Assembly (NCBI GenBank): GCA_002104945.1
Contig: MCFH01000022.1
Span: forward strand, 124,001 to 188,000
Source of the DNA: Piromyces finnis finn
Taxonomy: Eukaryota > Fungi > Neocallimastigomycota
DNA length: 64,000 nt
Direction: 5' to 3'
The notes under the pieces are model-generated. The model searched no databases, was not told the origin of the DNA, and saw only the letters and a list, made by a program, of their open reading frames with translations. A program made the translations under genes and the position numbers. Below are positions 19,155 to 60,500 of this stretch, one piece after another. How positions within the stretch are numbered: position 1 is the stretch's first letter; each line of letters begins with the position of its first letter.

Positions 19155-19199
<45 letters not shown>

Positions 19200-19240
19200 A
19201 AATTAAGTTTTTTCCTAAGGTAGTTATGGTAAAAAACGCG

Positions 19241-19251
19241 GTAAAGATTAT
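19241..19251 (-). promoter_or_regulatory. Self-priming PBS of B (ATAATCTTTAC)
   Basis: Abuts the 5' LTR; exact complement at 19485-19495. Confidence 0.8.
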
Positions 19252-21296: not shown

Positions 21297-21660
21297 AATA
21301 TCAATATTATATTAAAAATAAAAATATAAATAAGAGGAATAAAGAGTAATTTTAAAAATTCTTTGTGTGATTTTTAATATTCATTTTATAGTAAATTTAA
21401 TATTTAAATAATTTGTAATTATCATCTATATGTAATAAAAAAAAATTAAATAAAATAATTCAATAAAAATTTTTAATAATTATTTCTTATTAAAATTTAA
21501 CAATATTACTTTATTATATAATTAATAGAATATATCCTAACTTTTAAACTTAATAACTTAAATCCAATTAAACTCTTAATAATTCACACATTTACTTAAT
21601 AAAATAAATTTATATATTTTATATTCATATTTTAATACTAAGTATAAAAATGTTAGTTAA

Positions 21661-21732
21661 TGGAGATATCGGGGATCGAACCCGAGGCTTCTTGCATGCA
21701 AAGCAAGCACTCTACCACTGAGTTATATCCCC
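21661..21732 (-). tRNA. tRNA-Ala(UGC)
   Basis: GGGGATATAACTCAGTGGTAGAG...TT-TGC-AT...GGTTCGATCCCCGATATCTCCA; T5 run about 10 nt downstream. Confidence 0.95.
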
Positions 21733-21747
21733 AGCTTATAATATTTT

Positions 21748-22311
21748 TGATACGTGATAAAATTATATAGTTAAAAATATTAAATTTATATAGTTATTTT
21801 TAAGGGTTAGCAATTATTTAAGAAAAATAATAATTTAATCTATTATTGAATAACCAATAAAATATTATAAAAATTTTATATAAAAATAACAAAAATTCAC
21901 TTTTATTAAGAAAAGAGAGTTCTTTGATAAATATAATTAATTATTGAGAATTTTTATATCTGTTTTAACTAAAAATATTTTTTATATTAAATATATAAAT
22001 GTACTTAAAATTATTTTTATTAATAAAATAAAAGAGAAAGTTACAAATAAGATTTTTTTTATGTTTAATCCTTTTTTTTTCTTATATTCAAATACTTTGT
22101 GTATAAATTGTTAAAAATAATAAAAGTAAAAGCAAAATAATTAATAACACTAAAAAATAATTATTAGTTATAATATAAATAAATATACAAATAATCATTT
22201 TTTTTTTTATTCTTTTATTAGAATATATTATTTTGTATAAATCCCTTTTGTTCGACTCCTGGAAATAAAATAAATAATTAAATTTATGGTATTATTAAAT
22301 AATACGTACCA
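21748..22311 (+). repeat. 5' LTR of C
   Basis: TGATAC...GTACCA. Confidence 0.95.
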
Positions 22312-22319
22312 TAAATTTT

Positions 22320-22337
22320 TGGTGGAGAATCCGGGCG
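22320..22337 (+). promoter_or_regulatory. Primer binding site TGGTGGAGAATCCGGGCG (tRNA-Ala-like 3' end)
   Basis: TGG start 8 nt after the LTR; its complement reads as T-stem, acceptor stem and ACCA; identical copy at 57339. Confidence 0.85.
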
Positions 22338-22472
22338 AGCAAAACAAAATAATATGAAAAACAATAAAAGATAATAATAATATTTAGAAGAACTTATATA
22401 TATATATATATATAAAAAAAAAAAAAAAAAAAGGAAATATAAATATATAAATAATAAATAAATAAAAAAAAA

Positions 22473-23723: not shown

Positions 23724-23740
23724 GGAGAAGGATAACTCCC
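23708..23740 (+). promoter_or_regulatory. -1 frameshift signal of C (T TTA AAC plus GGGAG/CTCCC hairpin)
   Basis: Heptamer in the gag frame; the -1 frame is open from 23708 into pol. Confidence 0.75.
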
Positions 23741-23992
23741 AATAATCAAACCGTCATTAATGGAAAATATAATGAAAATAAAGATAATAAAAATATAAAT
23801 TTATTCAATTATTCAAATAATAAAAATCCACTTTATAATAATGATAATATACAGTATTCTAATAATCAATATGAAAATAATACTAATTATGCTCAAAAAG
23901 AGATTAATTTAAATAATAAGAATACTACTTCTTACGGAACTAGTTTTAATTATTCCAACAATGAAAAATATAAAGCTGAAAATAATAATGGG

Positions 23993-26900
23993 ATGAATAC
24001 TGATTATTCTATGAATGTATCAAACCAGAATGGAATTAGTGATATGTACCCTGAAATTGTTGCTGTTGCTACTAGAAAGAATAAGAATAATGATAAGAAA
24101 ACATTTACCCCATATAAAGTACCACCGGGTAAATTAAAAGATAATCCTGTACCAATATCTACCGCGGCAATGAATCACAATAAAACTGATATAAATGATG
24201 ACGACGAAGTAGTCCCACTTACAAGCGAGATAGATATGGAGATGAATGAACCAGTAAATATTAATAACCCTAAAGTAAATAATACTGATAATCATGAAGA
24301 TCAACTTAATAATGAAAAGGATAAGAGCAGTAGTGATGAGCAAGGTGAACCAACAAAGAAAAATAATCCTACTGTCAAATCAGGAAAAAGAATACATGCT
24401 GATAAAATTAGTGAAAATAACTCTAACTATATTGATGATGAAATTGGAAATAAATTGAGGAAAGATATTATTACAACATTTGATAATAGTTATAAAACAA
24501 AACCAACCAATCCTAAGAGGAAAAATTCCTATAATGACACTACTGATGATGACGCTCAATCTGATAAGAAAAGGAAAACAGAAAAATTGCAGTTTCTTGA
24601 TTTGTCATTTATTAATCAACCTAATATAACAAATGCAAAGAAGAAAAATAAGTTAGATAGAATAAACGAACTTTCAAATCTAGTTAGTGAAATTAATGAA
24701 GATAATAATAAAGCAGATGAATCATTGACTAAAAATGAAAAGCATATTAAAATACTTGAAAAGTTGGAAAACATGTACATTGAAGATCTGATTCGGGATA
24801 TTGTATCAACGGAAGTCAAAACTAAGTTAGTAAATTTGCTAGACTGGTTCCCTAAATTTAGAAGTGAATTTATAAAATCTTTAAAGTTAACTTCATTTAA
24901 AAACCCAGCATTAAATGTTATGTCACTTTTTAGTAGAAATAAAATTATTAAAGTACCTGGTGAAGTTGAAAATAATAATGCTGAAATTTTCTTGGATACC
25001 TGCTCTAGTGTTAATTTAATTACTAAATCAGCATTAAAGAAATTTCAAATCAACAAACCTTGTATTGGTACAATTACTGAAACTTTTCTACAAGCCTTCT
25101 CTAATAATAATTCAAATTCTAGTATTTATGAATTAAGTATAAAAATCGGTGATCTTACCTTTTCTGAATATTTTAGACTAGTAGACAAAGATGACATTTT
25201 TGATATACTAATTGGGGTTGATTCTTTAAAAAGAAATCGATTTGTTATTAACTTAGTGGATGATACTTTATATTTTATGGATTTAAGTAATAATCCAATT
25301 AAACTTACCAATTTGTGCTACGATATTAATATATACAATAATGGAAATGACAATAATCAAACTGAAGTTAATGATGATAAAGAACAGAATAATACTGATA
25401 ATGTTAAGCACACTAATTTTGATGATTATTACCTTTCAACTTATGGGATATTACCAGCATTAATTACAGTCACTAGTGAATCAACTACTAATAATCAAGG
25501 TTTAGATATAAAATTGAATAATTTAGAAATTAAAAGAAACATAATAAATAATATTATTACTGTATTACCTTTGGATATTCAAAACAAGATGAAGGATGTC
25601 TTTAACAACTTTATGGAGGTAATAGCCATTAAAACAGATGATTTAGGTAAGACTAAATTACTTCCTCATCATATTGACTTGCTACCAAATACTAAACCGA
25701 TTAAACAGAGAGCCTATAGATTACCGAAAGTTAAAGCTGATGCTCTAAAGGTAGAACTTACTAAGCTCATAGAGAATGGTCTTATTGAACCATCCCATTC
25801 ACCTTGGTCTTCACCTGTAGTTTTGGTTCCGAAAAAGAATAACCAAGTAAGAATGTGTGTAGATTACCGAATGTTGAATAATTTTACAATTAAAGACTCC
25901 TATGCTCTCCCCCTTATAGACGACATTCTGTATTATGTAGGTAATAATGCCGCAGTTTTAAGTACTATTGATTTGTTCTCAGGATACCATCAGATTCCAA
26001 TGCATCCTGATGATAAAGATAAAACTTGTTTTACCACTATTTTTAGTAATTATAATTTTGTTGTTATGCCCTTCGGTTTGTGTAATGCACCTGCGACTTT
26101 CCAAAGGGAAATGAACAGAATATTTTTTGATTTAATTGGAAAGTCTGTGTTCGTTTATATTGATGATTTAGTTATTTTTTCTAATTCTCTAGAACAACAT
26201 GTCACTGACTTAGCTTCTGTATTTCAAATTTTAAAAGATAATGGTTTGAAAATAAATATTGATAAATGTAATTTCTTTAAGCAAGAAGTTGAATTATTAG
26301 GTCATCTACTTTCTGTTGATGGTTTAAAACCTTTGGACTCGAAAATAAATGTTATATTAAATTGGATTCCACCTAAAAACATTAAACAACTTCGTTCCTT
26401 TTTAGGTGCAGTTGGGTATTACCGTAAGTTTATTTCTAACTTTGCACAAGTAGCTCAACCACTATACGAGCTCACTAAAAAAGGTATTCCTTACGAATGG
26501 TCCGATTCTTGTTCTAATTCTTTTGAAAATTTAAAATTAAAGTTAGCTTCGGCTCCAATTCTTTCTCCGCCTGATTTTAGCAAACCCTTTATTATAAGAA
26601 CGGATGCTTCTAGAAGTGGTATCGGTGGTGTTTTAATACAATTGGACAAAGATAAATTTGAGAAACCATTATACTACCAGAGTCGTACCCTATCTGATAC
26701 TGAAAGACATTATAGTATTACTGAACTTGAGGGAACTGCCGCCTATTATTGTGTTATGAAATTTAAATCATTTATTACAGGTAATAATTTTGATACTTTA
26801 TTAATTACAGATCACAAACCTTTAGTCAGCATTTTCAAAAATAAGGAACCAACAACAAGCCGCCACATAAAATGGATTACTGAATTTAGTGCATTAAGGG

Positions 26901-28414
26901 TGATTGTTCAATTTGAGGAGGGGAAGAAGAATGTTTTAGCAGACGCTTTATCTAGAATGGAGAGTTCTCAAACCCCTGTAATTATTAATAATGATGAAAA
27001 AAAAAATAGTAAAATTAATATTTCTGAATTTAATAATGCTAATGATTATTCTAATGAAGTTGGAAATAAAAATAAAATAGTTACTACAAAAAGTAAAATA
27101 AAAAAGAAAGTTAGATTTGATGACGATATTATAAATGTTAGTAAAAATGTTGATATTAGTAAAGAAATAGCAAACGTGATAGTTGAAAATAAAGACGTAA
27201 ATGGAGATATTCGTGTAGGTGATAGTAATGAACAAAGAGTAATGTTAAATAATTTTTTCAATGACTTTATAAAAAAAAGAATTATTTTAATTGATGGAAT
27301 AGAATATTATAAACATGGAGATAATTTTAGGAAAATAATTACTGATAATAATGAGAAAATCCGATTAATAGCTCAAGCTCATGCAATAGGACATGAAGGT
27401 ATTTATAAAACATATCATAGGTTATGTAGAGATTATTATTGGAAAGGAATGTCTAAAGATATAAAATTATTCATCAAAGGTTGCCATAAATGTCAAACAT
27501 GTAAAGTGCAACCATTAAATAAATATCCTGAAAATATTGCTACTCCACCAGAACTTCCTTTTACTCGTGTTAGTTTGGACTTAATAGGACCTTTAAATAC
27601 CACTAAAAGAGGCTCAAGGTATATTATTGCTTTAGTGGACTATATGACTAAATGGGTAGAGGCTTCCCCATTAATAAAAACTGAATCTGAAGATGTGATA
27701 AGATTTTTAACGGAAGTGTTTTGTAGGCATGGTATTCCAGAAGTCTTGGTTACAGATAATGGACCACAATTTAGTTCAGATAGAACTAAAGCATTCCTAG
27801 ATCTTAATGATGTGTTTGTACAATATATTACAACTTACCATCCTGCTTCAAATGGACAAATTGAAAACAGAAATAAAGAAATTTCAAAATATTTAAGAGT
27901 GTTAGGAAAAAATAATGAAGAATGGGACGATATATTACCTAGCGCTTTATGGGCACTTCGAACTGCTAAAAATGAAGTAACAAAATTTAGTAGTTTTGAA
28001 TTATTATATGGTCGCAGAGATATGCAACCATTTGAATTATCAATAAATTTAGATAAAAAAGGACCTGAAGAAACAGATGATGAATACTACCTTAGAAAAT
28101 TTATTACTCACCATAACTGGATTCAGGAAGCAATAAACAATATTGAGACTGCAAATGAGGTTTGGAGGGATAGAAGAAAACAAATAAGGAGATTAAGAAG
28201 TGAATTTAAACCCGGAGACCTTGTTTTGATAAAACACTTCAATCGTCGAAAATTGGACCCGTACTTTATTGGACCTTTAAAAATTATTAAACGACAATTC
28301 AACACTGTGACGGTATGTGACCCACAGACAGGGGAAATAGCCGAACGCAATATTCACCTTAAAAATATAATTCCGTATTATACCTCTTATGTAGGATATG
28401 TAAATGAAGAATGA
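23993..28414 (+). CDS. pol: Pol of element C (N-terminal extension, protease, RT, RNase H, integrase; no chromodomain)
   Basis: FLDTCS, YIDD, HxxxHxG...CxxC zinc finger, DDE core, GPY/F-like YFIGPL; the protein ends shortly after this motif. Confidence 0.96.
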   Translation: MNTDYSMNVSNQNGISDMYPEIVAVATRKNKNNDKKTFTPYKVPPGKLKDNPVPISTAAMNHNKTDINDDDEVVPLTSEIDMEMNEPVNINNPKVNNTDNHEDQLNNEKDKSSSDEQGEPTKKNNPTVKSGKRIHADKISENNSNYIDDEIGNKLRKDIITTFDNSYKTKPTNPKRKNSYNDTTDDDAQSDKKRKTEKLQFLDLSFINQPNITNAKKKNKLDRINELSNLVSEINEDNNKADESLTKNEKHIKILEKLENMYIEDLIRDIVSTEVKTKLVNLLDWFPKFRSEFIKSLKLTSFKNPALNVMSLFSRNKIIKVPGEVENNNAEIFLDTCSSVNLITKSALKKFQINKPCIGTITETFLQAFSNNNSNSSIYELSIKIGDLTFSEYFRLVDKDDIFDILIGVDSLKRNRFVINLVDDTLYFMDLSNNPIKLTNLCYDINIYNNGNDNNQTEVNDDKEQNNTDNVKHTNFDDYYLSTYGILPALITVTSESTTNNQGLDIKLNNLEIKRNIINNIITVLPLDIQNKMKDVFNNFMEVIAIKTDDLGKTKLLPHHIDLLPNTKPIKQRAYRLPKVKADALKVELTKLIENGLIEPSHSPWSSPVVLVPKKNNQVRMCVDYRMLNNFTIKDSYALPLIDDILYYVGNNAAVLSTIDLFSGYHQIPMHPDDKDKTCFTTIFSNYNFVVMPFGLCNAPATFQREMNRIFFDLIGKSVFVYIDDLVIFSNSLEQHVTDLASVFQILKDNGLKINIDKCNFFKQEVELLGHLLSVDGLKPLDSKINVILNWIPPKNIKQLRSFLGAVGYYRKFISNFAQVAQPLYELTKKGIPYEWSDSCSNSFENLKLKLASAPILSPPDFSKPFIIRTDASRSGIGGVLIQLDKDKFEKPLYYQSRTLSDTERHYSITELEGTAAYYCVMKFKSFITGNNFDTLLITDHKPLVSIFKNKEPTTSRHIKWITEFSALRVIVQFEEGKKNVLADALSRMESSQTPVIINNDEKKNSKINISEFNNANDYSNEVGNKNKIVTTKSKIKKKVRFDDDIINVSKNVDISKEIANVIVENKDVNGDIRVGDSNEQRVMLNNFFNDFIKKRIILIDGIEYYKHGDNFRKIITDNNEKIRLIAQAHAIGHEGIYKTYHRLCRDYYWKGMSKDIKLFIKGCHKCQTCKVQPLNKYPENIATPPELPFTRVSLDLIGPLNTTKRGSRYIIALVDYMTKWVEASPLIKTESEDVIRFLTEVFCRHGIPEVLVTDNGPQFSSDRTKAFLDLNDVFVQYITTYHPASNGQIENRNKEISKYLRVLGKNNEEWDDILPSALWALRTAKNEVTKFSSFELLYGRRDMQPFELSINLDKKGPEETDDEYYLRKFITHHNWIQEAINNIETANEVWRDRRKQIRRLRSEFKPGDLVLIKHFNRRKLDPYFIGPLKIIKRQFNTVTVCDPQTGEIAERNIHLKNIIPYYTSYVGYVNEE

Positions 28415-28433
28415 AAAGTGAAATTTTAAGGAA

Positions 28434-28476
<43 letters not shown>

Positions 28477-28532
28477 AAATTTCAAAATCTAAATTTCAAA
28501 AAAAAAAAAAAAAATAAAATAAAATAAAATAA

Positions 28533-28568
<36 letters not shown>

Positions 28569-29018
28569 AATAAATAAATAAATAATAAATGATAATAAAT
28601 AATACTAATAAATGATAGTAGTAATCATAATAAATAAACAATATTACAAATATATATAAAAATTTAATACTTACAAAAATAATTTAAAAGAATTTCAGTT
28701 GATGGAAAAATACATTTCAATTAATAGTAATTGTGAAATTTCAAAATTTCAAAATTTCAAAATTCAAATTGTAAATTTGATCAAATAATAATTAATAATT
28801 TTAATATAATAATTATAAATAATAATTATAATAATAATTTTTATTTAGTATATATATATAAAAAAAAAAAAAAAAAAATTTAAATTTCGAAATCTAAATT
28901 TTAAAAAAAAAAAAATTTTAATAATAATGATAATACTAAAATTTTCCTTTGTTTTATCGTATATCAATGCTTGCCATAAGACTTCAGGAGACGAAGTTTA
29001 ATTTCGGCGGAGGCATCT

Positions 29019-29583
29019 TGATACGTGATAAAATTATATAGTTAAAAATATTAAATTTATATAGTTATTTTTAAGGGTTAGCAATTATTTAAGAAAAATA
29101 ATAATTTAATCTATTATTGAATAACCAATAAAATATTATAAAAATTTTATATAAAAATAACAAAAATTCACTTTTATTAAGAAAAGAGAGTTCTTTGATA
29201 AATATAATTAATTATTGAGAATTTTTATATCTGTTTTAACTAAAAATATTTTTTATATTAAATATATAAATGTACTTAAAATTATTTTTATTAATAAAAT
29301 AAAAGAGAAAGTTACAAATAAGATTTTTTTTATGTTTAATCCTTTTTTTTTCTTATATTCAAATACTTTGTGTATAAATTGTTAAAAATAATAAAAGTAA
29401 AAGCAAAATAATTAATAACACTAAAAAATAATTATTAGTTATAATATAAATAAATATACAAATAATCATTTTTTTTTTTTATTCTTTTATTAGAATATAT
29501 TATTTTGTATAAATCCCTTTTGTTCGACTCCTGGAAATAAAATAAATAATTAAATTTATGGTATTATTAAATAATACGTACCA
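29019..29583 (+). repeat. 3' LTR of C
   Basis: Matches 21748-22311 apart from T-run length. Confidence 0.95.
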
Positions 29584-29587
29584 TTTT

Positions 29588-30267
29588 TGTGTAATAATTA
29601 TATTATATTTATTATATAATAATAATTATTAGCTTTAAATTAATAATATAAACTATTATTAAAATGTGAAAATAAAGGTAAAATTAGAAACTTAACTTAA
29701 TGAGTTTATTATAAGAAATTATAATATACAAAACCAAATGTATCAGAATTATTTTGTGTATTTAATAGTTTTTTTAATATTTATTTTATTACTTATTATT
29801 TTGTATAAAGTTATTTATTATAATTAATCTTATAATAATAACTCTTGATTTCTCAAATCGAACTCAAGAGTACTATTTATATGTTTTATTCTATTAAATT
29901 AAAATTTCTAAGAACATTCTAATCTTAACAAGAATCTTTTTAGGAAAAGACTAGAAGAAAAACCTAAAAAGTTATTTGATTGATATTCTAATCATACCAA
30001 TCATCGTAATATTAAGTAAAACCGTTGATAACGGGTAAAACCTTAATATCCGATTTCCTATTACATACTAATATATAGTTGTATAATATTATTAATGTAA
30101 TTAGTATGTGTTTTATCTTTTATAATACAAGTATATATATAAATGAATGTATAAATACATAATTAAATAAATTAATTAATCTAATATAGCGAATGAATAA
30201 TTATTAACTAAATAAATTATTTGTAATGTTTAATACTAAGAATAAATAATAAGTATTTATTTTTACA
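29588..30267 (-). repeat. Solo LTR, family J (copy J1)
   Basis: TGTGTAAT...TTTACA; shares a structured module with four other copies; strand inferred from G-U pairing. Confidence 0.75.
29917..30054 (-). other. Structured RNA module in J1 (ENE-like loop, hairpin, U-rich pseudoknot)
   Basis: Stems covary across the five J copies. Confidence 0.7.
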
Positions 30268-30271
30268 ATTT

Positions 30272-31894
30272 TGATAAATAATAATTATAAATATATTATA
30301 AATTTGATATTAGTAGAAAATTTGTGAAGATATTAACTGGATTTAAAACAAATTCAGATAATAACTATAATTAATTAAACATAATAATTAGAATTAAATA
30401 ATCCCAATAATTATTTTAAAACACCTTTAAAAGTCACCTTTTAAATTCTGATTCAGTGAAAGGGTTATGATTTCAAAAAATTTAATATCAATACACTATA
30501 ACCCTTAACCAAAAATAAACAAACACGAAACAAGGTGTAACTCGCCAAAAACGATCGCTACGGCTGTAAGTGATACGGCTATGAAACCAGGTTTATTAGA
30601 AAGCTTAAGGAAAAAGCTACATTTTGGTACAATCGCGGTCCTTCTAACTGGTCATTTAAGGAAGATATGATCATTTGAAGATTTTAATAAGTAAATTAAA
30701 ATTAATATGATATCAAGTATGGATCATAGACATTTCTTATGACTTGACGAAAATTAAAAAGATATCAATAGAAATTCTAATTATATTAATTTAATTAATG
30801 ATAGTGACTGTTACTAAAAATAGAACTAAACCATTTAGGTGTAACAGTTAACATTTATAAATTAAATAATTTTAATTATTATAAAATAGGTTAATGGATC
30901 AAGTGTTTAAATGATTAATCATATGTTTATTTTATTTTATGTCATGACAAAACAAACAAACAAGCAAACAAACAATCTTATTATATTATTAACATATTAC
31001 ATGTAATACTTTATTTTTATCAATTTAATAATCTGAACAAAGAATATAAAATAGAATGAATTGAATTTGATTTTAATTCTTTGTAAAGATTATAGTTATA
31101 ATCTTAATTATATAGTTATTAAATATATTATCATTTATATTATTATTAATAAATAAATAAAATTTTATAAAAAAAGTTATTCTAAAGAATAAATATTAAT
31201 TTTTCATTTGGAAGTTTAAAGGGTTATTTTATATTTAAATTTAATTTCTTAAAAACATATTTACTATATAATTGATAACATTCTGACCTGGCCGCATAAC
31301 CAAATCCAAAAACTTAACAAAATTTTATTATAAAATAATTATTAAATAATTTTATATAGTTTATTATAAAAATATAATTTACATAAAATCAAATATTTTA
31401 TAAATTTATATATTTGATTGGGTTAAATTATAAAAATAATTTTTAATATAAAGAATAATAATATTTTTTAGTAGAAAATGAGAAGACTTAGATTACTAAT
31501 AATAAGTTAAATTTTAATAATAGTTAATATAATTAATTAGTGAATACATAATAATATTTAAAAGACAAAAATAAGTTTTTATATAATAAAAATTATTGTT
31601 AAAAAGAGCGTAAGAACAATAAATAAAAGAAAATATAAAAACGAAATTAAACTTGTCTAATTTGTAATTATTGTGTTAATAATAAATAATATTTTATAGA
31701 ATAAATCTGGTGTTATTATTCTATATAAATATTATTAAAATAATAAAACTATTAAAATTATAAAATAACTTAAAATAAATTAATAAAACTAGTAGATATT
31801 GTTAAAGCTCGTACAATAGCTGTCGAGATAAAACAATATAAGATAACAGAAGAAGTAGTTAAAAAGTTGTAATATAATTACCAATCCGTTATCA
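30272..31894. repeat. Solo LTR, family F, interrupted by E
   Basis: 4-bp TSD ATTT. Confidence 0.85.
30323..31319. repeat. Solo LTR, family E (997 bp)
   Basis: TG...CA; 5-bp TSD AAATT; reverse copy at 61691-62822. Confidence 0.85.
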
Positions 31895-33794: not shown

Positions 33795-34627
33795 TGTGTA
33801 ATAATTATTATATATTTAATAATAATTATTATCTACAATATAATAATACAAATCGTAATATGTATTATTAAATTGAGAAGTTTCTTAATAGTAAATAAAA
33901 ATGAATAATTATCTTAAAGAGTTTATTATAAGTGAATTATAATAACAAACACAAAATATTAAGACTATCTTTAATGTAAATATTTTTTATGAATATAGTT
34001 TTTGAAAGGGTTATTTATTATAATTGTCTTAAAATAATAACTCTGGATTCTTTAGTGGAATTCCAGAGTTCTTATATTTATAATTTTTTGATAATTTAAA
34101 GTTTAATATAGAATTTCTAATCTTAACAAATAATCTTTTTAGGAAAAGACTAGAAGAAAAACCTAAAAAGATATTCGATTGATAACTAATATATCAATCA
34201 TCGTAATATTAAGTAAAACCGATTAAAATTCGGAAAAACCTTAATATCCGATTGTCCTAATATGTATTTATATTTTCTAATTGTTTCTATAAGTTATTTC
34301 AAAATACGATACATAAATATAAAATACAAACGTAAAATAAAATATATAATGTTTCTTATAAAATGTAATACAAAAATTATTAATTAAAAAATAAATGAAT
34401 GTTTACTATTATTTTAAATATATTACTAAATTAAATAAATAAATAATTAATATAGTAATTAAATAAATTTTAAATTAAGTAAATGAATAACTAATATCAA
34501 TATAGATAAATGTTTATAGTAATTTAAATGAATGTATGCTAATAGTTTAAATAAATAATTAATTTAATAATTAAAAAATAATTAAATAAGAATTAATTTA
34601 TACAAAAAATAATTATTAATTCTTACA
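33795..34627 (-). repeat. Solo LTR, family J (J2); structured module at 34115-34252
   Basis: TGTGTAAT...CTTACA; conserved module. Confidence 0.75.
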
Positions 34628-34682
34628 TTGTAAGAAATATTTGTGGCCATAAGTTTGCCCACAAATATTTCAATTGAAACCA

Positions 34683-37154: not shown

Positions 37155-38071
37155 TGTGTAGTAATTTTATTATAATATTTATATTAAATAGTATAATATA
37201 ATTACTTGTCGATAACTCAATATTAAAATTTAATATTAAATTATATGTATATGGAAAGAAATAATAAAAAATTAAATATGAAATTAAAAAACTAGAACTT
37301 AACGAGTTTATTATAAGGATTTATAATAAACAACAAAAAACACAAATGGGAAGAGGGATGAGAATAAAATGTATAATATAAGAATTATGTTTTATTAATA
37401 ATGATTTTTTATTAATTAATTTTTATTAAATAAAATTATTTGTTATTTATTATAATTAATTTTTCTTATAATAATAACTCTTGAATTCTAAAGAATTTCA
37501 AGAGTGTTTATTTATATTTTTATTAAAAAATAAGGTTAAATAAATGAGTTCTAATCTTAACAAATAAAATGTTTAGGAAAAGACTAGAAGAAAAACCTAA
37601 ACAAGTTTTCAACCAATATTCTAATCATATTGGTCATCGTGTAAATTTTAAGTAAAACCAATTATTTGTAATAATAATCGGAAAAACCTTAAAATACCGA
37701 TTTCCTAAAGTAAATCCGTGTTTAGATATAACAGGTAAATTAATTAGTAATATATAATTAAAGGGTAAAATTACGGATTCTTGTATATAAATATTATTTA
37801 AAAATCAAATGAACAAATTATTATTTAATTAAATAAATTAAATAAATTATATAAATATATGAAATATATTTAACTAAATAAATTAAATAAAGTATCTGAA
37901 TGTATACATTATATTTAACTAAATAAATTAAATAAATAATTTAAGTGTATAAAATATTATTAACTAAATAAATTAAATAAATAATTTAAGTGTATAAAAT
38001 ATTATTAACTAAATTATTAAACTAATAAGAAATATTAATTATTTAGATTGAAATAATTATTATTTCTTACA
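37155..38071 (-). repeat. Solo LTR, family J (J3); module at 37549-37701
   Basis: TGTGTAGT...CTTACA; conserved module. Confidence 0.7.
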
Positions 38072-45185: not shown

Positions 45186-46811
45186 TTTAAAATAAAATTT
45201 TTAATAATAAAATTTTAATAATTTTAAAAAAATTTTTAATTTTTTCCATGTGTCGAAATTTTTTAAATTTTTATATATGTTATTGTGACAATGTGCTACG
45301 GTTCAAATAAGATATCACAAAACACTTGAATAGTTATAAAAATAAAAATTTATTTAATTTTAATTTTTATTCATTTAATTTATTTTTGATTTTTCAATTT
45401 TTAAAATTTTTCTCAAAAATCTCGTACTTTTTCCAACTATCCATTATTTGAAATTTAATGATTTTGGATAGCTAAGGAATTAAATTGATTTCATTCATAA
45501 TATATGGATCATTCACTGTAACATTAATTAAATCCTTAATATATATTATGAATAATCTCTTAATATTTGAATAGAAAAATTTTTAATTTATAATTAATAA
45601 ATTTTTAATTTATGATATGTGTAACATTTTTGCATATCATATATTATATATTCAATTATAACATATAATAAAATTATATTATTCAATTAATTATGCCCTT
45701 TTTTAGACATAAATAATAATTTTTCTGTCGAGGTATCTTCTGTTTTGTGTGTAACAATTGCCTCTTTTAGTAAAAATTATAATTAATTTTTATGTCATAA
45801 TTTTAAATTATAAAATATTATACAATAAAGTTAATTAATAAAATGAATCTTAATTAATAATAAAATATACAATCATTTTAATAACATGAATTAAGTAAAT
45901 TTTATAAGAATAAAACATTATAATAAGACTAATATTAAAAGTAATGAAATAACTATATACAAATAATATAACTATATAATAAAATATAATTAATTAATAA
46001 GAAAATGTATAAAAATTATTATATAATTTTATAATTCAAAAATAGAGTTAAACAGTAGTAAGGAATGTAAATAGTTCATAATTGAGTTATAGCAATTTTA
46101 ACTATTTATGTTCATTCCTTAACAAATTGTAAGAAATTAGATTTATTTTATAATAAATAATCTATATTTCTTATTAAAATTAATTTATTATATTTTTTAT
46201 TTAACCTTTAATATTTTATTAAATTTTATTAAATTTTATTATAATACATAATGTATTTTAAATGTAATGTAAATTATTGTATTTAGAAAAAATCGATTAT
46301 TAGAATTTTCCCGAATCCATTCGGTTTTATCTAATAATACGATGATTGATAAGAATAGATTATCAATCGAAACTTTTCTAGTTTTTTCTTCTAATCTTTT
46401 TCTAGAAAAGAAATTTATTAAGATTAGAACTTTCTTTTATTCTTGTAATGAGGTATATCTAATGATAAGGGTTAGACTAGAAAATTATTAAGGTTAGATT
46501 AATGAAAATTTCATAATTATATTTTTATAACCAATCATTAAGTAATTAATTCACTTATCAAATTGTATTAAAAAAAAATAATTTTCATGTATAAAAGAGA
46601 GATTAAGAAAGATAAAATAGTTCTTTAGTGTTTTTATTAATAATTAATAAAAATTAGTTTTTTTGTTTCGTCTTTAGTTTGATAATACACTGACCTAGCG
46701 AGTTAGTCGTATTATAATAATAAATTTAATAAATAAACATTATTAAAAAAAATATATATATATTTGATTACATTAGAGTGTGTGTGTTTATTATTATAAT
46801 ATTTCGTTACA

Positions 46812-46822
46812 ATAAAAACACT
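46812..46822 (+). promoter_or_regulatory. Self-priming PBS of D (ATAAAAACACT)
   Basis: Abuts the 5' LTR; exact complement AGTGTTTTTAT at 46627-46637. Confidence 0.8.
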
Positions 46823-46883
46823 CTAAGAAAAAGATCGCTACCTCAGTGCCTCGTTTATTTGCTTACTTCTAATTTTTTTTTTT

Positions 46884-49800
46884 ATGGATAACTCTGCTGA
46901 TTTGAAGAACGGTTTTGATGGCAACCGTCGCTACCTGAAGGGATTCTTAGCCAAAATGGACATGATCTTTATGATCCATCCTAAAATAGGAAGGGACGAT
47001 GGAGAAAAGGTCTTCTACGTCGTTAGTCGCCTCTACGGGGATGCAATGAATTGGGCTGCTACCTTGATTAACAACCATGATCCTTGCTTACAGGATTATG
47101 GCGCCTTTGTTGGAAAGCTGAAGGCTGCTTTTGGTTTTCAGGATATGGTCTATACTGCCAACCAAAAGCTCAAGAAGATCAAACAACATGGCCTATCCAA
47201 TACTCAAGAGTATATCAAGGAATTTAACTACTATGCTGATGAATCCACTTGGAATGAACAAGCCAAGATGGATGCTTTTGTTGATGGGTTGGACGATAGA
47301 ATCGCCACCCATATCCTTCAGATGTTTCCTGGCCCTTCTACCTTGATAAACTTACAAACAATAGCCAGTCGTATAGGAAGTAGATTGGCATGCCACCAAG
47401 AGGAAATAAACAGAAGATCCAATAGAAGTTTCCGTTCTAAACAAAGCTTCCAATCCCGCTCCTCAGAAAGATCTACAAGTAAATCCACTCAGCCCAAGAA
47501 GGAAAATAATTTTGGCCCCATTTCAAGTGAAGAACGTAGCCGCCGAATGAAAGAGAATCTCTGCTTATATTGTGGTAAACCTGGTCACCGATTATCTGAA
47601 TGCCCTATTAGAACCAAAAAGGAAAACCATACTAATAATGCTGGGGTCCATGTTTTGAATGAACAAGAAAAATCCACTCGACTTTCGGATAACTCCTCTT
47701 TACCTCAAACGGTTATCGATGTTGATGTTGTTCTTCCATACAAATCTGTCGGAACTAAAGTTCTCTTAGATAGTGGTTCACAATTCTGTTTGATAGACCA
47801 CGCCTTTGTTAAGGCCCATGAGATCCCTATAATTACCAAAGTAAAATGCCCACAAATTATAGGTATCGGAGGTCACCAAAAGATTATCGGCCAGACTTGG
47901 CCTATAACTGTGGAACACATGAATCACTCATGCCAGTTACAATTTTACGTCGTAGAATTGCCTTCTTACTGTTGTATTCTTGGCTCTGATTGGCTAGCCC
48001 TTCACAATCCGACAATCAATTTTGCTAGTAAGGACGTTTCCTATCATTCTGAATACTGTAAGGAAAATTGCTTAAGGAAAGTATCTGCTAGCTCTACCAC
48101 TTCTGAACTCGAAGACCAATCGAAGGACGAAATGTCAGTTGGAAATACACCTGAATACCCTTTCAATGTATTCACTTGTTTAGAAGAACCTGAAGTTGAG
48201 TCACCCCAAATTCCAATCCACTACTCTCAACACTCCAAAGTGTTCGAGGAAAGGCTCGCTGATAAACTCCCTCCTCATCGTCCGTACGACTGTGAGATCA
48301 ACCTGAGACCAAATAGCAACTTGTTTTATGGTCCAATCTACCGACTTACTGAGAAAGAATCAAAGGTATTAGAAGAAACCATTAATGAAAATTTAAAAAA
48401 GGGGTTTATCCGCAAATCCAAATCGCCAGCTGGTGCTCCCGTTCTGTTTGTCCCGAAGAAGAGTGGAGAACTTCGTATGTGTATCGACTACCGCCGCTTG
48501 AACGAAATCACCATTAGGAACTCGTACCCTCTCCCATTGATCCAAGACATGTTGGATCATCTAGGAAAAGCTAAGGTGTTCTCGAAGCTAGATCTTCGAT
48601 CCGCCTATAACTTGGTAAGAATCAAAGAAGGCGATGAATATAAGACCGCCTTCACCTGTCAATTTGGCCATTTCGAATATCTGGTAATGCCTTTCGGTCT
48701 CAAGAACGCTCCTGCAGTCTTCCAACATTTTATTAACGACGTTCTTGAAGGCATTATCGGTAAATTCGTCTTTTCGTATATTGACGATATTATCATTTTC
48801 TCTGATAATATAGCCGAACATCATGAACACGTCAATGAAGTCCTTCGTAGACTCGAAGAAGCCGGATTGTACGCTAAACTTGAAAAATGTCTATTCGACT
48901 CTCCTTGTCTTGACTTCCTTGGTCATAGAATCTCTGCCTCTGGTATCGGAATGGATCCTAATAAGGTGAAAGCCATTGCGGAATGGCCGACTCCTAAATC
49001 GGTCCATGAACTACAATCTTTCCTAGGCTTAGCCAACTATTATCGTAGATTTATTCCTGGCTTTGCTAAGATTGCTCACCCACTCCACCAACTTTGCAAG
49101 AAGAACACCGCCTTCGTTTGGAACGATACCGCTCAAGATGCTTTTGATGCTTTGGTTAAGCATTTTATTAGTCAGCCTATCCTTGCATATCCTGATGTTG
49201 ACCTACCTTTCGTTGTCGAAACCGATGCAAGTAACTTCGCCATAGGTGCTGTATTGTCTCAAGTCAACAAGTCCTACAATATTCTTCACCCTGTTGCGTT
49301 CTTTTCTAGATCCCTTACAAACCCGGAGAAGAACTACCCTATCTATGATAAAGAACTTTTGGCTATCGTCGCGTCCTTAGAAGTGTGGAGACATTTTTTG
49401 AAAGGTGCGAATCATCCTTTCAAAATTATATCAGACCACAGAAACCTCCTTTTTCAGAAGAAACCGGAGAAGATGACTCAGAGATTAATTAGATGGTCCC
49501 TTTTCCTTGCTGAATTCGATTTTGTCATTGAATATCGCCCTGGTTCCTCGAACGGGAAAACCGATGCCTTGTCAAGAAGACCTGACTATCTTGATCACTC
49601 TTGCAATTCCGATTCTAATAACTCTGTCTTTCGTCCCGAAAATTTCAGCTCCTGCTTTGCTTCATCCACTCCTTCTCTTCTTGAAAAAATTGCTCTCTCT
49701 TGTAAACTTGACAAATTCTTCATTGAGACTTCTAATCAACTTCTCAAAGATAATTGTTCTTCTGACTACAAATTTAGTAACAACGTCCTCCTTTTCCAAG

Positions 49801-51080
49801 ATAAAATCTATGTTCCTAATGATTGCCGAGTTGAAATTCTGTCTTCTTGTCATGACTCCCCTGCTGACGGCCATTTTGGTATTTCAAAAACTTTATCCTT
49901 GATTTCCCGTAACTACTGGTGGCCCAAAATGTATCAGGATGTTAAGGACTATGTCCGTTCTTGTGAGGTCTGCTGTCGTTCGAAATCCTCTAGACATAAA
50001 CCTTACGGGTTATTATCCACTCTTCCTTTAGGTGAACGTCCCTGGTCTTCCATTGCTATGGATTTTATCACTGACCTCCCCTCTTCTCGTGGATTTACCT
50101 GTATCTTCGTTGTCATTGATCGATTGACAAAAATGGCTCACTTTATCCTTCTTGAAAAAGTTCCCACTGCTGAACGTGCTGCCGAAGCTTTCATTAACAA
50201 CGTCTTCAAACTTCATGGATGCCCCTCCGACATTATTCTCGACCAAGGTTCTCAGTTCACTTCAAAGTTTTGGAAGAAATTCTTTGCTACCCTCAAGATT
50301 GATTTGAAATACTCTTCTGCTTATCACCACCAATCCAATGGCCAGACGGAGAGAGTGAACTCCGTTGTAGAACAATATCTACGCTGCTTCTCAAATTACA
50401 AAGGCACTAACTGGATCGAATACTTAAGCCTAGCTGAATTTAGTTACAATAATTCAGTTCAAGAATCTGCAAAACAAACACCCTTCTTCTTGAACTATGA
50501 TTTCCATCCTAATTTTAATCCAACAATTCCAACAACAAGTGAAGTTCCAAGAGCTGAAGAATACACAAAAGAACTAAAAGAAATTATCAGCACCCTCAAG
50601 AAAAACCTTTCGGAAGCCCAAAAGAAACAAGAACATTTCGCCAATAGACATAGACAACCAGGCCCGTCATTCAAACCAGGAGAAAAGGTATGGTTAATCA
50701 ATAATAATTTAGTTAAGGGAAATAAAAAATTCACCCCTCGGAAACTCGGTCCCTATGAAATTGAACAACAAATATCAGAAGTCTCATTCAAATTGAAACT
50801 CCCTGGTAACATGAAGATTGATCCGGTATTCCATAAATCATCTCTCGAACCTTACTTCGAAGGGAAAAGTACAAACCGAAAAGTTCAACCTCCACCACCT
50901 GTCATTATAAACGAAGAGGAGGAATACGAAGTAGAAGAAATTCTGGACAAAAGAAGACGCTATAACAAAACTCAGTACTTGATCAAATGGAAAGGATATC
51001 CTATTTCAGAAGCCTCATGGGAACCCGAAGGAAATCTGAACTGTCCAGCAAAGCTAAGAGAATTCAACAAGACCCATTAA
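46884..51080 (+). CDS. gag-pol: Gag-Pol polyprotein of D (1398 aa) with a canonical chromodomain
   Basis: CLYCGKPGHRLSEC, LLDSGS, YIDD, RNase H, integrase, GPY, then YEVEEILD...YLIKWKGY...SWEP. Confidence 0.97.
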   Translation: MDNSADLKNGFDGNRRYLKGFLAKMDMIFMIHPKIGRDDGEKVFYVVSRLYGDAMNWAATLINNHDPCLQDYGAFVGKLKAAFGFQDMVYTANQKLKKIKQHGLSNTQEYIKEFNYYADESTWNEQAKMDAFVDGLDDRIATHILQMFPGPSTLINLQTIASRIGSRLACHQEEINRRSNRSFRSKQSFQSRSSERSTSKSTQPKKENNFGPISSEERSRRMKENLCLYCGKPGHRLSECPIRTKKENHTNNAGVHVLNEQEKSTRLSDNSSLPQTVIDVDVVLPYKSVGTKVLLDSGSQFCLIDHAFVKAHEIPIITKVKCPQIIGIGGHQKIIGQTWPITVEHMNHSCQLQFYVVELPSYCCILGSDWLALHNPTINFASKDVSYHSEYCKENCLRKVSASSTTSELEDQSKDEMSVGNTPEYPFNVFTCLEEPEVESPQIPIHYSQHSKVFEERLADKLPPHRPYDCEINLRPNSNLFYGPIYRLTEKESKVLEETINENLKKGFIRKSKSPAGAPVLFVPKKSGELRMCIDYRRLNEITIRNSYPLPLIQDMLDHLGKAKVFSKLDLRSAYNLVRIKEGDEYKTAFTCQFGHFEYLVMPFGLKNAPAVFQHFINDVLEGIIGKFVFSYIDDIIIFSDNIAEHHEHVNEVLRRLEEAGLYAKLEKCLFDSPCLDFLGHRISASGIGMDPNKVKAIAEWPTPKSVHELQSFLGLANYYRRFIPGFAKIAHPLHQLCKKNTAFVWNDTAQDAFDALVKHFISQPILAYPDVDLPFVVETDASNFAIGAVLSQVNKSYNILHPVAFFSRSLTNPEKNYPIYDKELLAIVASLEVWRHFLKGANHPFKIISDHRNLLFQKKPEKMTQRLIRWSLFLAEFDFVIEYRPGSSNGKTDALSRRPDYLDHSCNSDSNNSVFRPENFSSCFASSTPSLLEKIALSCKLDKFFIETSNQLLKDNCSSDYKFSNNVLLFQDKIYVPNDCRVEILSSCHDSPADGHFGISKTLSLISRNYWWPKMYQDVKDYVRSCEVCCRSKSSRHKPYGLLSTLPLGERPWSSIAMDFITDLPSSRGFTCIFVVIDRLTKMAHFILLEKVPTAERAAEAFINNVFKLHGCPSDIILDQGSQFTSKFWKKFFATLKIDLKYSSAYHHQSNGQTERVNSVVEQYLRCFSNYKGTNWIEYLSLAEFSYNNSVQESAKQTPFFLNYDFHPNFNPTIPTTSEVPRAEEYTKELKEIISTLKKNLSEAQKKQEHFANRHRQPGPSFKPGEKVWLINNNLVKGNKKFTPRKLGPYEIEQQISEVSFKLKLPGNMKIDPVFHKSSLEPYFEGKSTNRKVQPPPPVIINEEEEYEVEEILDKRRRYNKTQYLIKWKGYPISEASWEPEGNLNCPAKLREFNKTH

Positions 51081-51834
51081 AAAAAAAAAAAAAAAATATT
51101 AGCTTATAAATTCGTCTGGAATCCGAATATAGAGGAGGAGCTTGTAATGAGGTATATCTAATGATAAGGGTTAGACTAGAAAATTATTAAGGTTAGATTA
51201 ATGAAAATTTCATAATTATATTTTTATAACCAATCATTAAGTAATTAATTCACTTATCAAATTGTATTAAAAAAAAATAATTTTCATGTATAAAAGAGAG
51301 ATTAAGAAAGATAAAATAGTTCTTTAGTGTTTTTATTAATAATTAATAAAAATTAGTTTTTTTGTTTCGTCTTTAGTTTGATAATACACTGACCTAGCGA
51401 GTTAGTCGTATTATAATAATAAATTTAATAAATAAACATTATTAAAAAAAATATATATATATATTTGATTACATTAGAGTGTGTGTGTTTATTATTATAA
51501 TATTTCGTTACAATTCTTTAAGTTTTTATATAAAAAGACCTCTTGAGTTTCATTTGAAAATCAAGAGTTATTATTATAAGAAATTATAATAAATAACATA
51601 AATAAATTGATACACTTTTAACATTAATAAAACATTCTTATAATAAAAAATATTTTAAACCCTAACACGAACGTTATTTACAGGCTCTTATAATAAACTC
51701 GATAAGTATATTTTTCTTTATTTTAATAAATAGTTTCCTTATCATTATCTCATTTTAACAATTAGTGTTAAAATGTAGCTAATAATTTTATTATGTGAAA
51801 TACTAATGCATATAATAAAATTATTACATAAATG

Positions 51835-59873: not shown

Positions 59874-60500
59874 TGTAAGAAATAATAATTATTTGATACA
59901 TAATTAATATTTCTTAGTTAAAATCATTAATTATTAATCATTAATTAATGTTATTAATATTAGTTTATTTAAATAATTATTCTCATTTAAATTTATTTTA
60001 ATTATTTATTTTCACTTAATTTTAATATCTTAAATTACATTTAGCCATTTAATTATATTATTCATTAATATTTTATTTAATATTTTTATTAATTATATTT
60101 ATGCATTTAATTAATTAATTTAATTAATTACTTATATTTAACTTTATATTTTTATCAAATATATTTAATTATTTATTTAATTAATTACTTTAAAATAATT
60201 ATTCATTGTTTAGGAATCGATATTTTAAGGTTTTTTCCAATTTCTAAAATAATTGGTTTTACTTAAAATATACGATGATCAATATGTATAGAATGTTGAT
60301 CGAACTTTGTTTAGGTTTTTCTTCTAATCTTTTCCTAAACAAAAAATTATTTTGTTAAGATTAGATAAAATTTTAATTTAAACTTTAAATTTATTAAATA
60401 ATATAAATAAGACTCTTGATTCTCTTCTAAGGAATCAAGAGTTATTATTATAAGAAACAAATTATAATAATAAAAGTGTTTTTAATTTTATTTTACTTAA
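59874..60500 (+). repeat. J-family LTR (J6); module at 60216-60365; right end uncertain
   Basis: Starts TGTAAGAAAT; conserved module. Confidence 0.65.

What the first reader, a model, noticed from the sequence alone, without database searches (positions are those of the whole stretch)
30003..30054. ENE-like U-rich internal loop conserved with covariation in five J-family LTRs
Seen on the strand favoured by G-U pairs: lower stem, GUUUUU, upper stem-loop, UUUUA, lower stem. J2 reads UAUUAAG-G-UUUUU-CCGA-loop-UCGG-UUUU-A-CUUAAUA. The lower stem covaries: UAUUAAG/CUUAAUA in J1 and J2, UUUUAAG/CUUAAAA in J3 and J6, UAUUAGA/UCUAAUA in J5. Copies are at 30003-30054, 34200-34252, 37636-37701, 46292-46343 and 60216-60276, while flanking sequence barely aligns. 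Known: ENEs (KSHV PAN, MALAT1, plant and fungal TE RNAs) capture poly(A) in a U-A-U triple helix. Inference: a stabilising element near the 3' end of the genomic RNA.
Basis: partly seen in the sequence, partly recalled or inferred. Interest (0 to 1): 0.85.

Follow-up and report, generated by a model that had tools for sequence, protein, structure and literature searches.

The report
ENE-like hairpin in fungal retrotransposon LTRs
Five decayed copies of one retrotransposon LTR in an AT-rich, probably anaerobic-fungal genome share a conserved RNA hairpin with two facing runs of U, which looks like the known "ENE" clamps that grip a poly(A) tail and protect the RNA; this would be a new example of a known device, and it is not yet proven.

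Summary
The hairpin is real. At all five coordinates a 52-61-nt stem-loop has a long lower stem, two facing U tracts and a G-C-closed upper stem. The 5' tract has 4-6 U. The 3' tract is always four U plus A. The stems covary: in the wider module 12 of 28 pairs change on both sides, 96% of cells pair, and 0 of 500 shuffles reach this. A descriptor for the architecture hits only these five sites in 64 kb (0.35 expected).

The hairpin is the first of three conserved hairpins in a 127-nt module. The module belongs to a ~680-830-bp solo-LTR family with TG..CA ends, in a retrotransposon graveyard of an AT-rich, probably neocallimastigomycete fungus.

A sixth copy on a public contig has, right after its LTR, 18 nt complementary to the LTR 32 nt past a conserved TATA box. 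This is the Tf1/sushi self-priming signature. So the U-rich strand is sense, the module lies in U3, and in the genomic RNA it sits ~190 nt before AAUAAA.

This fits an ENE-type poly(A) clamp, a kind already reported inside LTRs of plant and fungal elements. Against it: no Rfam family matches and the U tracts are short. Binding, transcripts and poly(A) sites are untested. Verdict: a credible new member of a known kind.

The parts
30003..30054 (-). H1 of copy J1: ENE-like hairpin (extended lower stem, U4 / U4+A internal loop, 5-bp upper stem)
   Evidence: MFE -13.1, z -3.0
34200..34252 (-). H1 of copy J2
   Evidence: z -3.0
37640..37700 (-). H1 of copy J3 (9-bp upper stem with one G.U)
   Evidence: z -3.7
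46292..46343 (+). H1 of copy J5 (lower stem with two compensated pairs)
   Evidence: z -4.3
60216..60276 (+). H1 of copy J6 (5' tract of six U)
   Evidence: z -4.4
29937..30062 (-). J1 three-hairpin module (H1 30003-30054, H2 29978-30002, H3 29936-29971)
   Evidence: CM R1 133.7 bits; all three hairpins kept in a 276-nt fold
34136..34260 (-). J2 module
   Evidence: CM 129.4 bits
37570..37708 (-). J3 module
   Evidence: CM 119.8 bits
46284..46408 (+). J5 module
   Evidence: CM 128.3 bits
60209..60341 (+). J6 module
   Evidence: CM 112.3 bits
29590..30267 (-). J1 solo LTR (sense on the minus strand). TG..CA ends. A 5-bp duplication ATTTT if the LTR is read from 29588.
33797..34627 (-). J2 solo LTR
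37270..38071 (-). J3 LTR; the U5 end is not identifiable (approximate left bound)
46128..46441 (+). J5 LTR, first piece (U3 with module), ending where element E3 is inserted
51520..51828 (+). J5 LTR, second piece (TATA 51527-51535, self-primer-like stretch 51558-51574, AATAAA 51588-51593, U5). Compared apart from the first piece, not joined.
59874..60470 (+). J6 LTR, truncated shortly after the R-like stretch (TATA 60402-60410; self-primer-like stretch 60431-60448)
29917..29926 (-). J1: invariant 10-mer complementary to the H3 loop (candidate pseudoknot or alternative helix)
29873..29881 (-). J1 TATA box, conserved in all six copies
29841..29871 (-). J1 hairpin H4 across the U3/R junction. Its 3' arm (from 29851) is the stretch that the PBS of copy L002 complements.
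29814..29819 (-). J1 AATAAA, 32 nt after the inferred R start and 192 nt after the end of the 3' U-tract/lower-stem motif (about 184 nt after the hairpin's last base, 30003)
46442..51514 (+). E3, an intact-looking chromovirus nested in J5 (372-bp LTRs, TSD ATTCT). It gives the known-sense control for the self-priming logic.
21660..21733 (-). tRNA-Ala gene. J1 lay 10-14 bp upstream of it before E2 (21748-29583) inserted between them.

Best explanation
Proposed mechanism. H1 is an ENE-type element, a stem-loop whose two facing U tracts clamp a run of A. It sits in the U3 region of a Ty3/gypsy LTR family (J) that primes its own reverse transcription and targets tRNA genes, in an AT-rich, probably neocallimastigomycete fungus. 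Because it is in U3, it is transcribed only from the 3' LTR. It ends up in the 3' untranslated part of the genomic RNA, about 190 nt before AAUAAA. There the poly(A) tail could fold back between the U tracts (U.A-U triples), with the adjoining G-C pairs closing the clamp, and slow deadenylation and decay.

Shown here: the structure, its covariation, the invariance of the U tracts, its rarity, and the folded strand.

Inferred from sequence logic: the sense strand, the U3 position and the distance to the poly(A) signal.

Inferred by analogy only: poly(A) capture and stabilisation.

H2 and H3 are conserved companions whose role this model does not explain.
For: Architecture. The same shape is present in all five window copies and in a sixth copy from another assembly (L002), whose lower stem has a different sequence but still pairs.

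Covariation. 95.8% of cells are paired. 12 of 28 pairs change on both sides. 0 of 500 shuffles reach this. Slid controls pair at 30-48%.

Loop conservation. The four plus four loop U and the following A are invariant while the stems change. G-C or C-G pairs close the loop on both sides in 5 of 6 copies each.

Rarity. The descriptor hits only the five J sites in 64 kb (0.35 expected). A relaxed version also finds L002 but nothing in about 150 kb of related fungal element contigs.

Folded strand. 7 G.U and 0 A.C cells on the U-rich strand, plus 3 more G.U in the H3-loop helix.

Sense strand.
- There is a conserved TATA box, then 29-32 nt, then a conserved stretch, then AATAAA 30-36 nt further on.
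- In L002 the 18 nt right after the LTR are 17/18 complementary to that stretch.
- Elements E3 and E1, whose sense is known from their genes, show the same arrangement (11/11 and 11/11). It is conserved in an E3 relative.
- Self-priming of this kind is established for Tf1 and Tj1 (PMC4600332).

Precedent. ENEs embedded in LTRs of plant and fungal elements are reported (PMC13541005, PMC12501189, PMC7583470). G-C pairs next to the U tracts are needed for triplex formation in Evade (PMC12501189).

Context. H1 stays folded with an open loop in 276-286-nt contexts.
Against: - The 3' tract has only four U, against five triples in the solved PAN ENE (PMC7583470).
- Only one G-C pair adjoins the loop on the lower side, and J5 has A-U there.
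- The hairpin's 3' end is about 185 nt from AAUAAA, so about 200-215 nt from the inferred poly(A) site, with H2, H3 and H4 in between.
- No Rfam family matched at E<=10.
- There are only six copies, five from one locus, and the alignment was fitted to the model.
- There are no transcript, TSS or poly(A)-site data, and no full-length J element was found. The sense strand rests on one PBS-like flank plus motif logic.
- U runs are common in a 13-17% G+C genome and could serve proteins or 3'-end processing instead.
- The ENE model leaves H2, H3 and the invariant H3 loop unexplained.
Confidence: 0.45

Rival explanations
1. The module is a different kind of 3'-UTR RNA signal. H1-H3 would display U-rich and pyrimidine-rich single strands for proteins. 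One option is a U3-located upstream enhancer of cleavage and polyadenylation, which would let the 3' LTR signal be used while the identical R signal at the 5' end is ignored. Other options are an export, packaging or translation signal.
For: - The module is in U3 and so is absent from the 5' copy of R, which is the logic of upstream polyadenylation enhancers in retroviruses (own knowledge).
- AATAAA lies in R and is therefore present at both RNA ends.
- The most conserved part of the module is the H3 loop, an 18-nt pyrimidine tract with one variable position, not H1.
- Three hairpins are conserved together, more than an ENE needs.
Against: - The exact facing of two U tracts, closed by G-C pairs on both sides, is not needed for a linear U-rich enhancer, and it is unique to H1 in the window.
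- The U tracts lie 130-215 nt from AATAAA, farther than typical upstream elements (own knowledge).
Confidence: 0.25
2. The module works as double-stranded DNA. It would be a promoter-proximal element of the LTR (55-185 bp upstream of the TATA box), with the inverted repeats and the pyrimidine tract as factor-binding sites.
For: - Its position is directly upstream of a conserved TATA box.
- There is an invariant CT-rich tract on the coding strand. Such tracts are common in fungal promoters (own knowledge).
Against: - Stem sequences change while pairing is kept (12 pairs with double changes). Duplex binding sites do not require this.
- The G.U versus A.C asymmetry (7:0, plus 3:0) points to a single strand.
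Confidence: 0.1
3. The A-rich strand is the sense strand. The U-rich hairpins would then form in minus-strand cDNA or in an antisense transcript.
For: - The terminal 8-10 nt of J read in the A-rich orientation resemble E3's termini in sense orientation.
- J5 and J6 share about 50 bp beyond one LTR end that is not purine-rich.
- G.T wobble is also tolerated in DNA hairpins.
Against: - The self-priming complement in L002, the TATA-to-primer spacing matching E1 and E3, and the conserved AATAAA all fit the U-rich orientation.
- LTR termini are inverted repeats and discriminate poorly.
- The shared J5/J6 flank has no complement in J5's own LTR (and inspection).
Confidence: 0.07
4. The hairpin is a chance or neutral feature of an AT-rich repeat, kept only by shared descent.
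For: - There are only six copies, and they are related by descent.
- The shuffle control does not remove relatedness (caveat stated).
Against: - Compensated changes occur in four helices.
- The loop U are invariant against 35-65% identity around them.
- Slid controls are far lower.
- The architecture is absent elsewhere.
Confidence: 0.03

Closest known systems
ENEs of plant and fungal transposable-element RNAs, including ENEs embedded in LTRs (Tycowski, Shu & Steitz 2016, as summarised in PMC7583470, PMC13541005, PMC12501189)
   Same: A stem-loop with a U-rich internal loop next to G-C pairs, carried by an LTR retrotransposon near the 3' end of its RNA. The host is a fungus. The position is inside the LTR.
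   Different: Most published plant examples are double-domain; this one has a single domain. The U tracts are shorter (4 on the 3' strand). It is accompanied by two more conserved hairpins. I could not read the 2016 paper (not held), so I cannot say whether this family or this fungal phylum is already in its list.
Evade (Copia93) ENE of Arabidopsis (PMC12501189)
   Same: U tracts as internal loops of a fold-back in the 3' part of an LTR retrotransposon RNA. The flanking G-C pairs are essential there and are conserved here.
   Different: [quoted passage not shown] J's lies inside U3 and has two. Evade is a copia element of a plant, with experimental proof. J has none.
KSHV PAN RNA ENE (as described in PMC7583470 and PMC13541005; no sequence fetched)
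   Same: A single-domain stem-loop with a U-rich internal loop, proposed to clamp the poly(A) tail of its own RNA.
   Different: PAN forms five U.A-U triples plus three A-minor triples, about 100 nt from the tail (the distance is from my own knowledge). J offers four invariant U per strand and one adjoining G-C pair on the lower side, about 200-215 nt from the inferred poly(A) site. There is no sequence similarity and no Rfam hit.
MALAT1 / MEN-beta ENE plus A-rich tract (PMC7583470)
   Same: A U-rich internal loop that binds a run of A in cis.
   Different: Those use a genomically encoded A-rich tract and RNase P processing, with 9-10 triples. No conserved A-rich tract follows H1 in J.
Tf1 / Tj1 self-primed LTR retrotransposons; Tj1 and Ty3 tRNA-gene targeting (PMC4600332)
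   Same: This is context for the carrier element. A PBS next to the 5' LTR is complementary to the start of the transcript. Insertion is 10-14 bp upstream of a tRNA gene (Tj1: 5-11 bp).
   Different: No ENE-like element is reported for Tf1 or Tj1 in the paper read. The J internal region is unknown.

Membership tests
ENE (triple-helix RNA stability element) | Stem-loop with an internal loop that is U-rich on both strands | tested here: met
   The 5' tract has 4-6 U. The 3' tract has 4 U plus A. Both face each other and are unpaired in every single-copy and in-context fold. Eight U columns are invariant in six copies.
ENE (triple-helix RNA stability element) | One or more G-C pairs adjoining the U-rich loop (PMC7583470; essential in Evade, PMC12501189) | tested here: met
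   The upper closing pair is C-G in 5 copies and U.G in 1. The lower closing pair is G-C in 5 and A-U in 1, where the next pair is G-C.
ENE (triple-helix RNA stability element) | U tracts long enough for a stable run of U.A-U triples (five in the solved PAN complex) | tested here: inconclusive
   Only four U on the 3' strand in all copies. I found no stated minimum in the papers I could read.
ENE (triple-helix RNA stability element) | Lies upstream of the poly(A) tail (or an A-rich tract) of the same polyadenylated RNA | tested here: inconclusive
   Inferred from the U3 position, 192-196 nt before a conserved AATAAA measured from the 3' U-tract/lower-stem motif (about 185 nt from the hairpin's 3' end), and from the sense strand given by self-priming logic. 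No transcript or poly(A) site was available.
ENE (triple-helix RNA stability element) | Binds oligo(A) as a triple helix | not testable with these tools
   Needs probing, melting or structure determination.
ENE (triple-helix RNA stability element) | Raises the stability or abundance of its RNA | not testable with these tools
   No expression data were reachable.
ENE (triple-helix RNA stability element) | Match to a curated covariance model | tested here: not met
   No ENE-type or other relevant Rfam 15 family matched at E<=10 for J1, J5, J6 or L002. The only hits were weak generic hairpin hits far below gathering scores. I could not check which ENE models Rfam 15 holds.
LTR of an LTR retrotransposon | TG..CA inverted termini and a length of several hundred bp | tested here: met
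   The termini read TGTAA.. and ..TTACA in J1, J2, J5 and L002. Lengths are 678-831 bp.
LTR of an LTR retrotransposon | Target-site duplication | tested here: inconclusive
   J1 has a 5-bp ATTTT on both sides if the LTR is read from TGTG. J2 and J5 show none.
LTR of an LTR retrotransposon | Two copies flanking gag-pol | tested here: not met
   All five window copies are solo, split or truncated. No full-length J element was found in the contigs of the eight pol relatives that were looked up. L002 shows an LTR plus a PBS-like flank only.
Tf1/sushi-type self-primed elements | PBS next to the 5' LTR complementary to the 5' end of the transcript (PMC4600332) | tested here: met
   L002: 17/18 complementary, starting 32 nt after the TATA box. 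E3: 11/11. E1: 11/11. The transcription start sites themselves are not mapped.
Tf1/sushi-type self-primed elements | pol phylogeny within the group | not tested
   The J internal region is unknown. The neighbours E1 and E3 carry the Tf2-1-type SH3 domain.

The most novel reading that the evidence does not exclude
H1 may not be a stand-alone ENE. It could be one arm of a composite, so far undescribed 3'-end module of self-primed fungal retrotransposons. The module would comprise an ENE-like clamp, a second covarying hairpin, and a hairpin whose invariant pyrimidine loop pairs with an invariant 10-mer downstream as a pseudoknot. The clamp might grip the long genomically encoded A run that these elements carry in their 5' leader just after the PBS, rather than the tail. 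That would link the two ends of the genomic RNA.
Probability: 0.1. Interest if true: 0.7.

Novelty: new member of a known kind. Interest (0 to 1): 0.4.

Why it matters
If the clamp is real, it extends ENE-type RNA protection to retrotransposons of the anaerobic gut fungi. These genomes are among the most AT-rich known. Their mobile elements are little described: my one search combining Neocallimastigomycota, LTR retrotransposon and tRNA returned a single, unrelated paper.

It would also give a compact natural example (52-61 nt, four triples at most) that tests how short a working poly(A) clamp can be.

The context found here is useful for annotating these genomes whatever H1 turns out to do. 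This context is a U3 module next to a TATA box, self-priming, and stacking of insertions upstream of one tRNA gene.

Tried and rejected
Searches for more copies.
- An anchored pattern (not constraining H1) gave one true copy in metagenome contigs (L002) plus one chance hit.
- It gave nothing in viral contigs and three chance hits in bacterial genomes.
- A second pattern gave 17 chance hits in viral contigs, none confirmed by the model.

Search for a full-length J element.
- Exact-protein look-ups of two window proteins found nothing.
- Contigs of eight pol relatives of E3 and E1 (L007-L017, L035-L044) contain no J module.
- A pol search in viral contigs gave one distant locus.

Ideas dropped.
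- I first suspected the purine-rich strand of H3 was a polypurine tract and the module a leader or PBS region. I rejected this because the module lies 200-400 nt inside TG..CA-bounded units.
- I considered the shared J5/J6 flank as a PBS for the opposite orientation. I dropped it because J5's own LTR has no complement and the motif count is at chance level.
- Assembled contigs of an E3 relative (L009, L013) could not serve to map transcript ends, because they break at homopolymer runs.
- Weak model hits at 62883-62975 and 59327-59421 are tRNA-like sequences, not modules.

Papers. The 2012 and 2016 ENE survey papers and the 2021 structure paper are not held.

- The two pieces of J5 were compared apart and not joined across the nested element.
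- The covariance model was made from natural copies only, and its consensus was never printed.

Full report
THE WINDOW

The window has 13-30% G+C. It holds three tRNA genes and otherwise almost only Ty3/gypsy retrotransposons and their LTRs.
- E1 spans 12585-20285 on the minus strand, with 1039-bp LTRs.
- E2 spans about 21748-29583 on the plus strand, with 567-bp LTRs.
- E3 spans 46442-51514 on the plus strand. It has 372-bp LTRs, a single 1398-aa gag-pol with a chromodomain, and the duplication ATTCT.
- There are pol remnants at 108-4496 and 54196-56331. The latter is 5'-truncated and its reading frame is interrupted once.
- There are many solo LTRs.

The closest named pol relatives are gene models of Orpinomyces (57-69% identity), and the rest are unnamed gut or metagenome contigs. 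The host is therefore probably an anaerobic gut fungus (Neocallimastigomycota). This is an inference, not a proof.

THE OBSERVATION

The five hairpins are present at the stated places.

Folding. Each folds alone into a long lower stem, a 6-7-nt 5' loop strand containing 4-6 U, an upper stem-loop of variable sequence, and a 5-nt 3' loop strand of four U plus A. The z-scores are -2.9 to -4.4.

Strand. RNAalifold recovers the structure on the U-rich strand with a better energy than on the opposite strand: -19.3 against -13.9 kcal/mol. Every wobble cell is G.U on the U-rich strand and would be A.C on the other.

Rarity. A descriptor of my own requires a lower stem of at least 5 bp with a G-C among its top two pairs, U4+, an upper stem of at least 4 bp closed by G-C, and U4+. 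It finds exactly the five sites in both strands of the window. Forty dinucleotide shuffles give a mean of 0.35.

WHAT THE HAIRPIN BELONGS TO

H1 is the first of three hairpins in a 127-nt module (alignment A2). H2 follows directly. H3 has a 6-9-bp stem and an 18-nt pyrimidine loop with a single variable position.

A covariance model built from the five natural copies finds only those five in the window. An anchored pattern that does not constrain H1 found one more copy in a public contig: L002, JAEEGJ010342090.1, scoring 100.6 bits. Its H1 lower stem has a largely different sequence and still pairs.

On the six-sequence alignment:
- 95.8% of cells pair.
- 12 of 28 pairs change on both sides.
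- No shuffle out of 500 reaches the observed values.
- Sliding the partners by 1-3 columns drops pairing to 30-48%.

The eight loop U and the A after the 3' tract never vary.

Six related sequences are too few for a formal test, and five of them trained the model. I therefore call the covariation strong but not final.

THE UNITS ARE LTRs

They begin TGTAA.. and end ..TTACA. The three complete units (J1, J2 and L002) are about 670-830 bp long, and J1 has a 5-bp duplication. J5 is split by the nested E3. J3 and J6 are incomplete at one end. None flanks genes in the window.

WHICH STRAND IS SENSE

Read on the U-rich strand, the module is followed by these features in order:
- an invariant 10-mer;
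- a TATA box conserved in all six copies;
- a hairpin (H4) with two covarying pairs;
- an invariant stretch starting 29-32 nt after the TATA box;
- AATAAA a further 30-36 nt on.

In L002 the 18 nt immediately after the LTR are 17/18 complementary to that invariant stretch. A PBS that complements the start of the element's own transcript is the hallmark of self-primed elements of the Tf1/sushi group, including the tRNA-targeting Tj1 (PMC4600332).

Two elements in the window, whose sense is fixed by their genes, behave the same way:
- E3: the 11 nt after the 5' LTR are 11/11 complementary to a site about 28 nt after its TATA box. The same pair is conserved in a relative from the L002 assembly.
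- E1: 11/11, 38 nt after its TATA box.

I conclude that the U-rich strand is the sense strand and that transcription starts in the 3' arm of H4. The module then lies in U3, ending about 55 nt upstream of the TATA box. In the genomic RNA it is present only at the 3' end. In J1 and J3, AAUAAA lies 192-196 nt after the 3' U-tract/lower-stem motif, which is about 185 nt after the hairpin's last base. These steps are inferred from sequence. No transcript was available.

MECHANISM

The shape, the invariance of the facing U tracts, the G-C closure on both sides and the 3'-terminal position fit the definition of an ENE. That definition is a stem-loop with a U-rich internal loop next to G-C pairs that captures the poly(A) tail in U.A-U triples (PMC7583470). 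ENEs inside the LTRs of plant and fungal elements are on record (PMC13541005). In Evade the element protects the RNA from deadenylation (PMC12501189). I take this as the most likely function (0.45).

Points against are listed in the Against line. The main ones are four U only on the 3' strand, no Rfam match, a distance of about 200 nt or more to the tail, and two unexplained partner hairpins.

Rivals:
- another RNA-level 3'-UTR role, such as a U3-located enhancer of polyadenylation or a protein platform (0.25);
- a promoter element acting as duplex DNA (0.1);
- the opposite sense strand (0.07);
- neutrality (0.03).

COMPARISON AND NOVELTY

It works like an ENE and meets the two structural criteria I could test. 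The criteria of poly(A) binding and stabilisation cannot be tested here, and the model-match criterion was not met. I therefore file it as a candidate new member of a known kind, not as an established ENE.

I could not read the 2016 survey to see whether this phylum was covered. No paper in the library links these fungi with LTR elements and tRNA targeting.

LIMITS AND CONDUCT

- The J5 pieces were compared apart.
The comparison with PAN rests on reviews.
- No contig looked human.

Noticed in passing
window 46812-46822 vs 46627-46637; E1 junction near 19240-19251 vs its LTR; L035 about 1050-1215: E3 and E1 carry Tf1/sushi-type self-priming signatures. The 11 nt after the 5' LTR are perfectly complementary to a site 28-38 nt after the LTR's TATA box. 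The E3 pair is conserved in a relative from another assembly. E2 instead has a TGG-starting PBS candidate about 8 nt after its 5' LTR.
   Followed up: yes
window 21734-21747, 29584-29590, 30268-30272: J1 is a solo LTR with the duplication ATTTT that lay 10-14 bp upstream of tRNA-Ala. E2 later landed in the same few bases. J ends also abut TGATA-type LTR ends within 2-6 bp at about 33797, 38072, 30268 and 51829. This looks like repeated insertion at one Pol III target.
   Followed up: partly
window 29945-29959 with 29917-29926 (J1) and the same places in J2, J3, J5, J6; L002 1327-1341 with about 1361-1370: Ten nt of the invariant H3 loop are complementary to an invariant 10-mer 18-22 nt downstream in all six copies (98% paired, G.U in three copies). 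There is no covariation because both sides never vary. This may be an H-type pseudoknot or an alternative helix. The MFE fold of L002 uses it.
   Followed up: partly
window 29841-29871 (J1) and homologous sites; L002 1404-1437: Hairpin H4 spans the inferred U3/R junction and has two covarying pairs. Its 5' arm resembles the PBS (14/18 in L002), so the start of R can pair either with the PBS or with the end of U3.
   Followed up: partly
window 62884-62955 (+), about 59340-59420 (-); L002 about 890-960 (-); L035 about 633-700 (-) and 846-905 (+): There are tRNA-like sequences with D-arm and T-arm motifs next to LTR ends. Neither ARAGORN nor Rfam calls them. They may be degenerate or unusual Pol III genes that serve as insertion targets.
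   Followed up: no
window 19160-19200 (E1 leader), 22400-22470 (E2 leader), 28415-29017 (E2 3' UTR); L002 1665-1712: Long genomically encoded A runs (about 19-45 nt) lie in the leaders just before gag, or just after the PBS. There are several in E2's 3' untranslated region. The L002 contig ends inside such a run.
   Followed up: no
window 37822-38046 and 40203-40337: There are 45-bp AT-rich tandem repeats in the upstream U3 of J3, and an inverted related array nearby. This part of U3 differs in length between copies (about 165-370 nt).
   Followed up: no
window 46442-51514: E3 looks recently inserted. Its LTRs are 99.5% identical, it has one uninterrupted 1398-aa gag-pol ORF with a chromodomain, and it has a clean 5-bp duplication inside J5.
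   Followed up: partly
window 53047-53953 and 56253-57156: An inverted pair of about 815-bp LTRs (95.6% identical) brackets the E4 pol remnant. The same LTR family recurs at 7082-7900, 11081-11872 and 39294-40108.
   Followed up: no
window 34620-34640: The end of J2 is followed after one base by the first 10 nt of a J LTR in inverted orientation, giving a short perfect palindrome at the junction.
   Followed up: no
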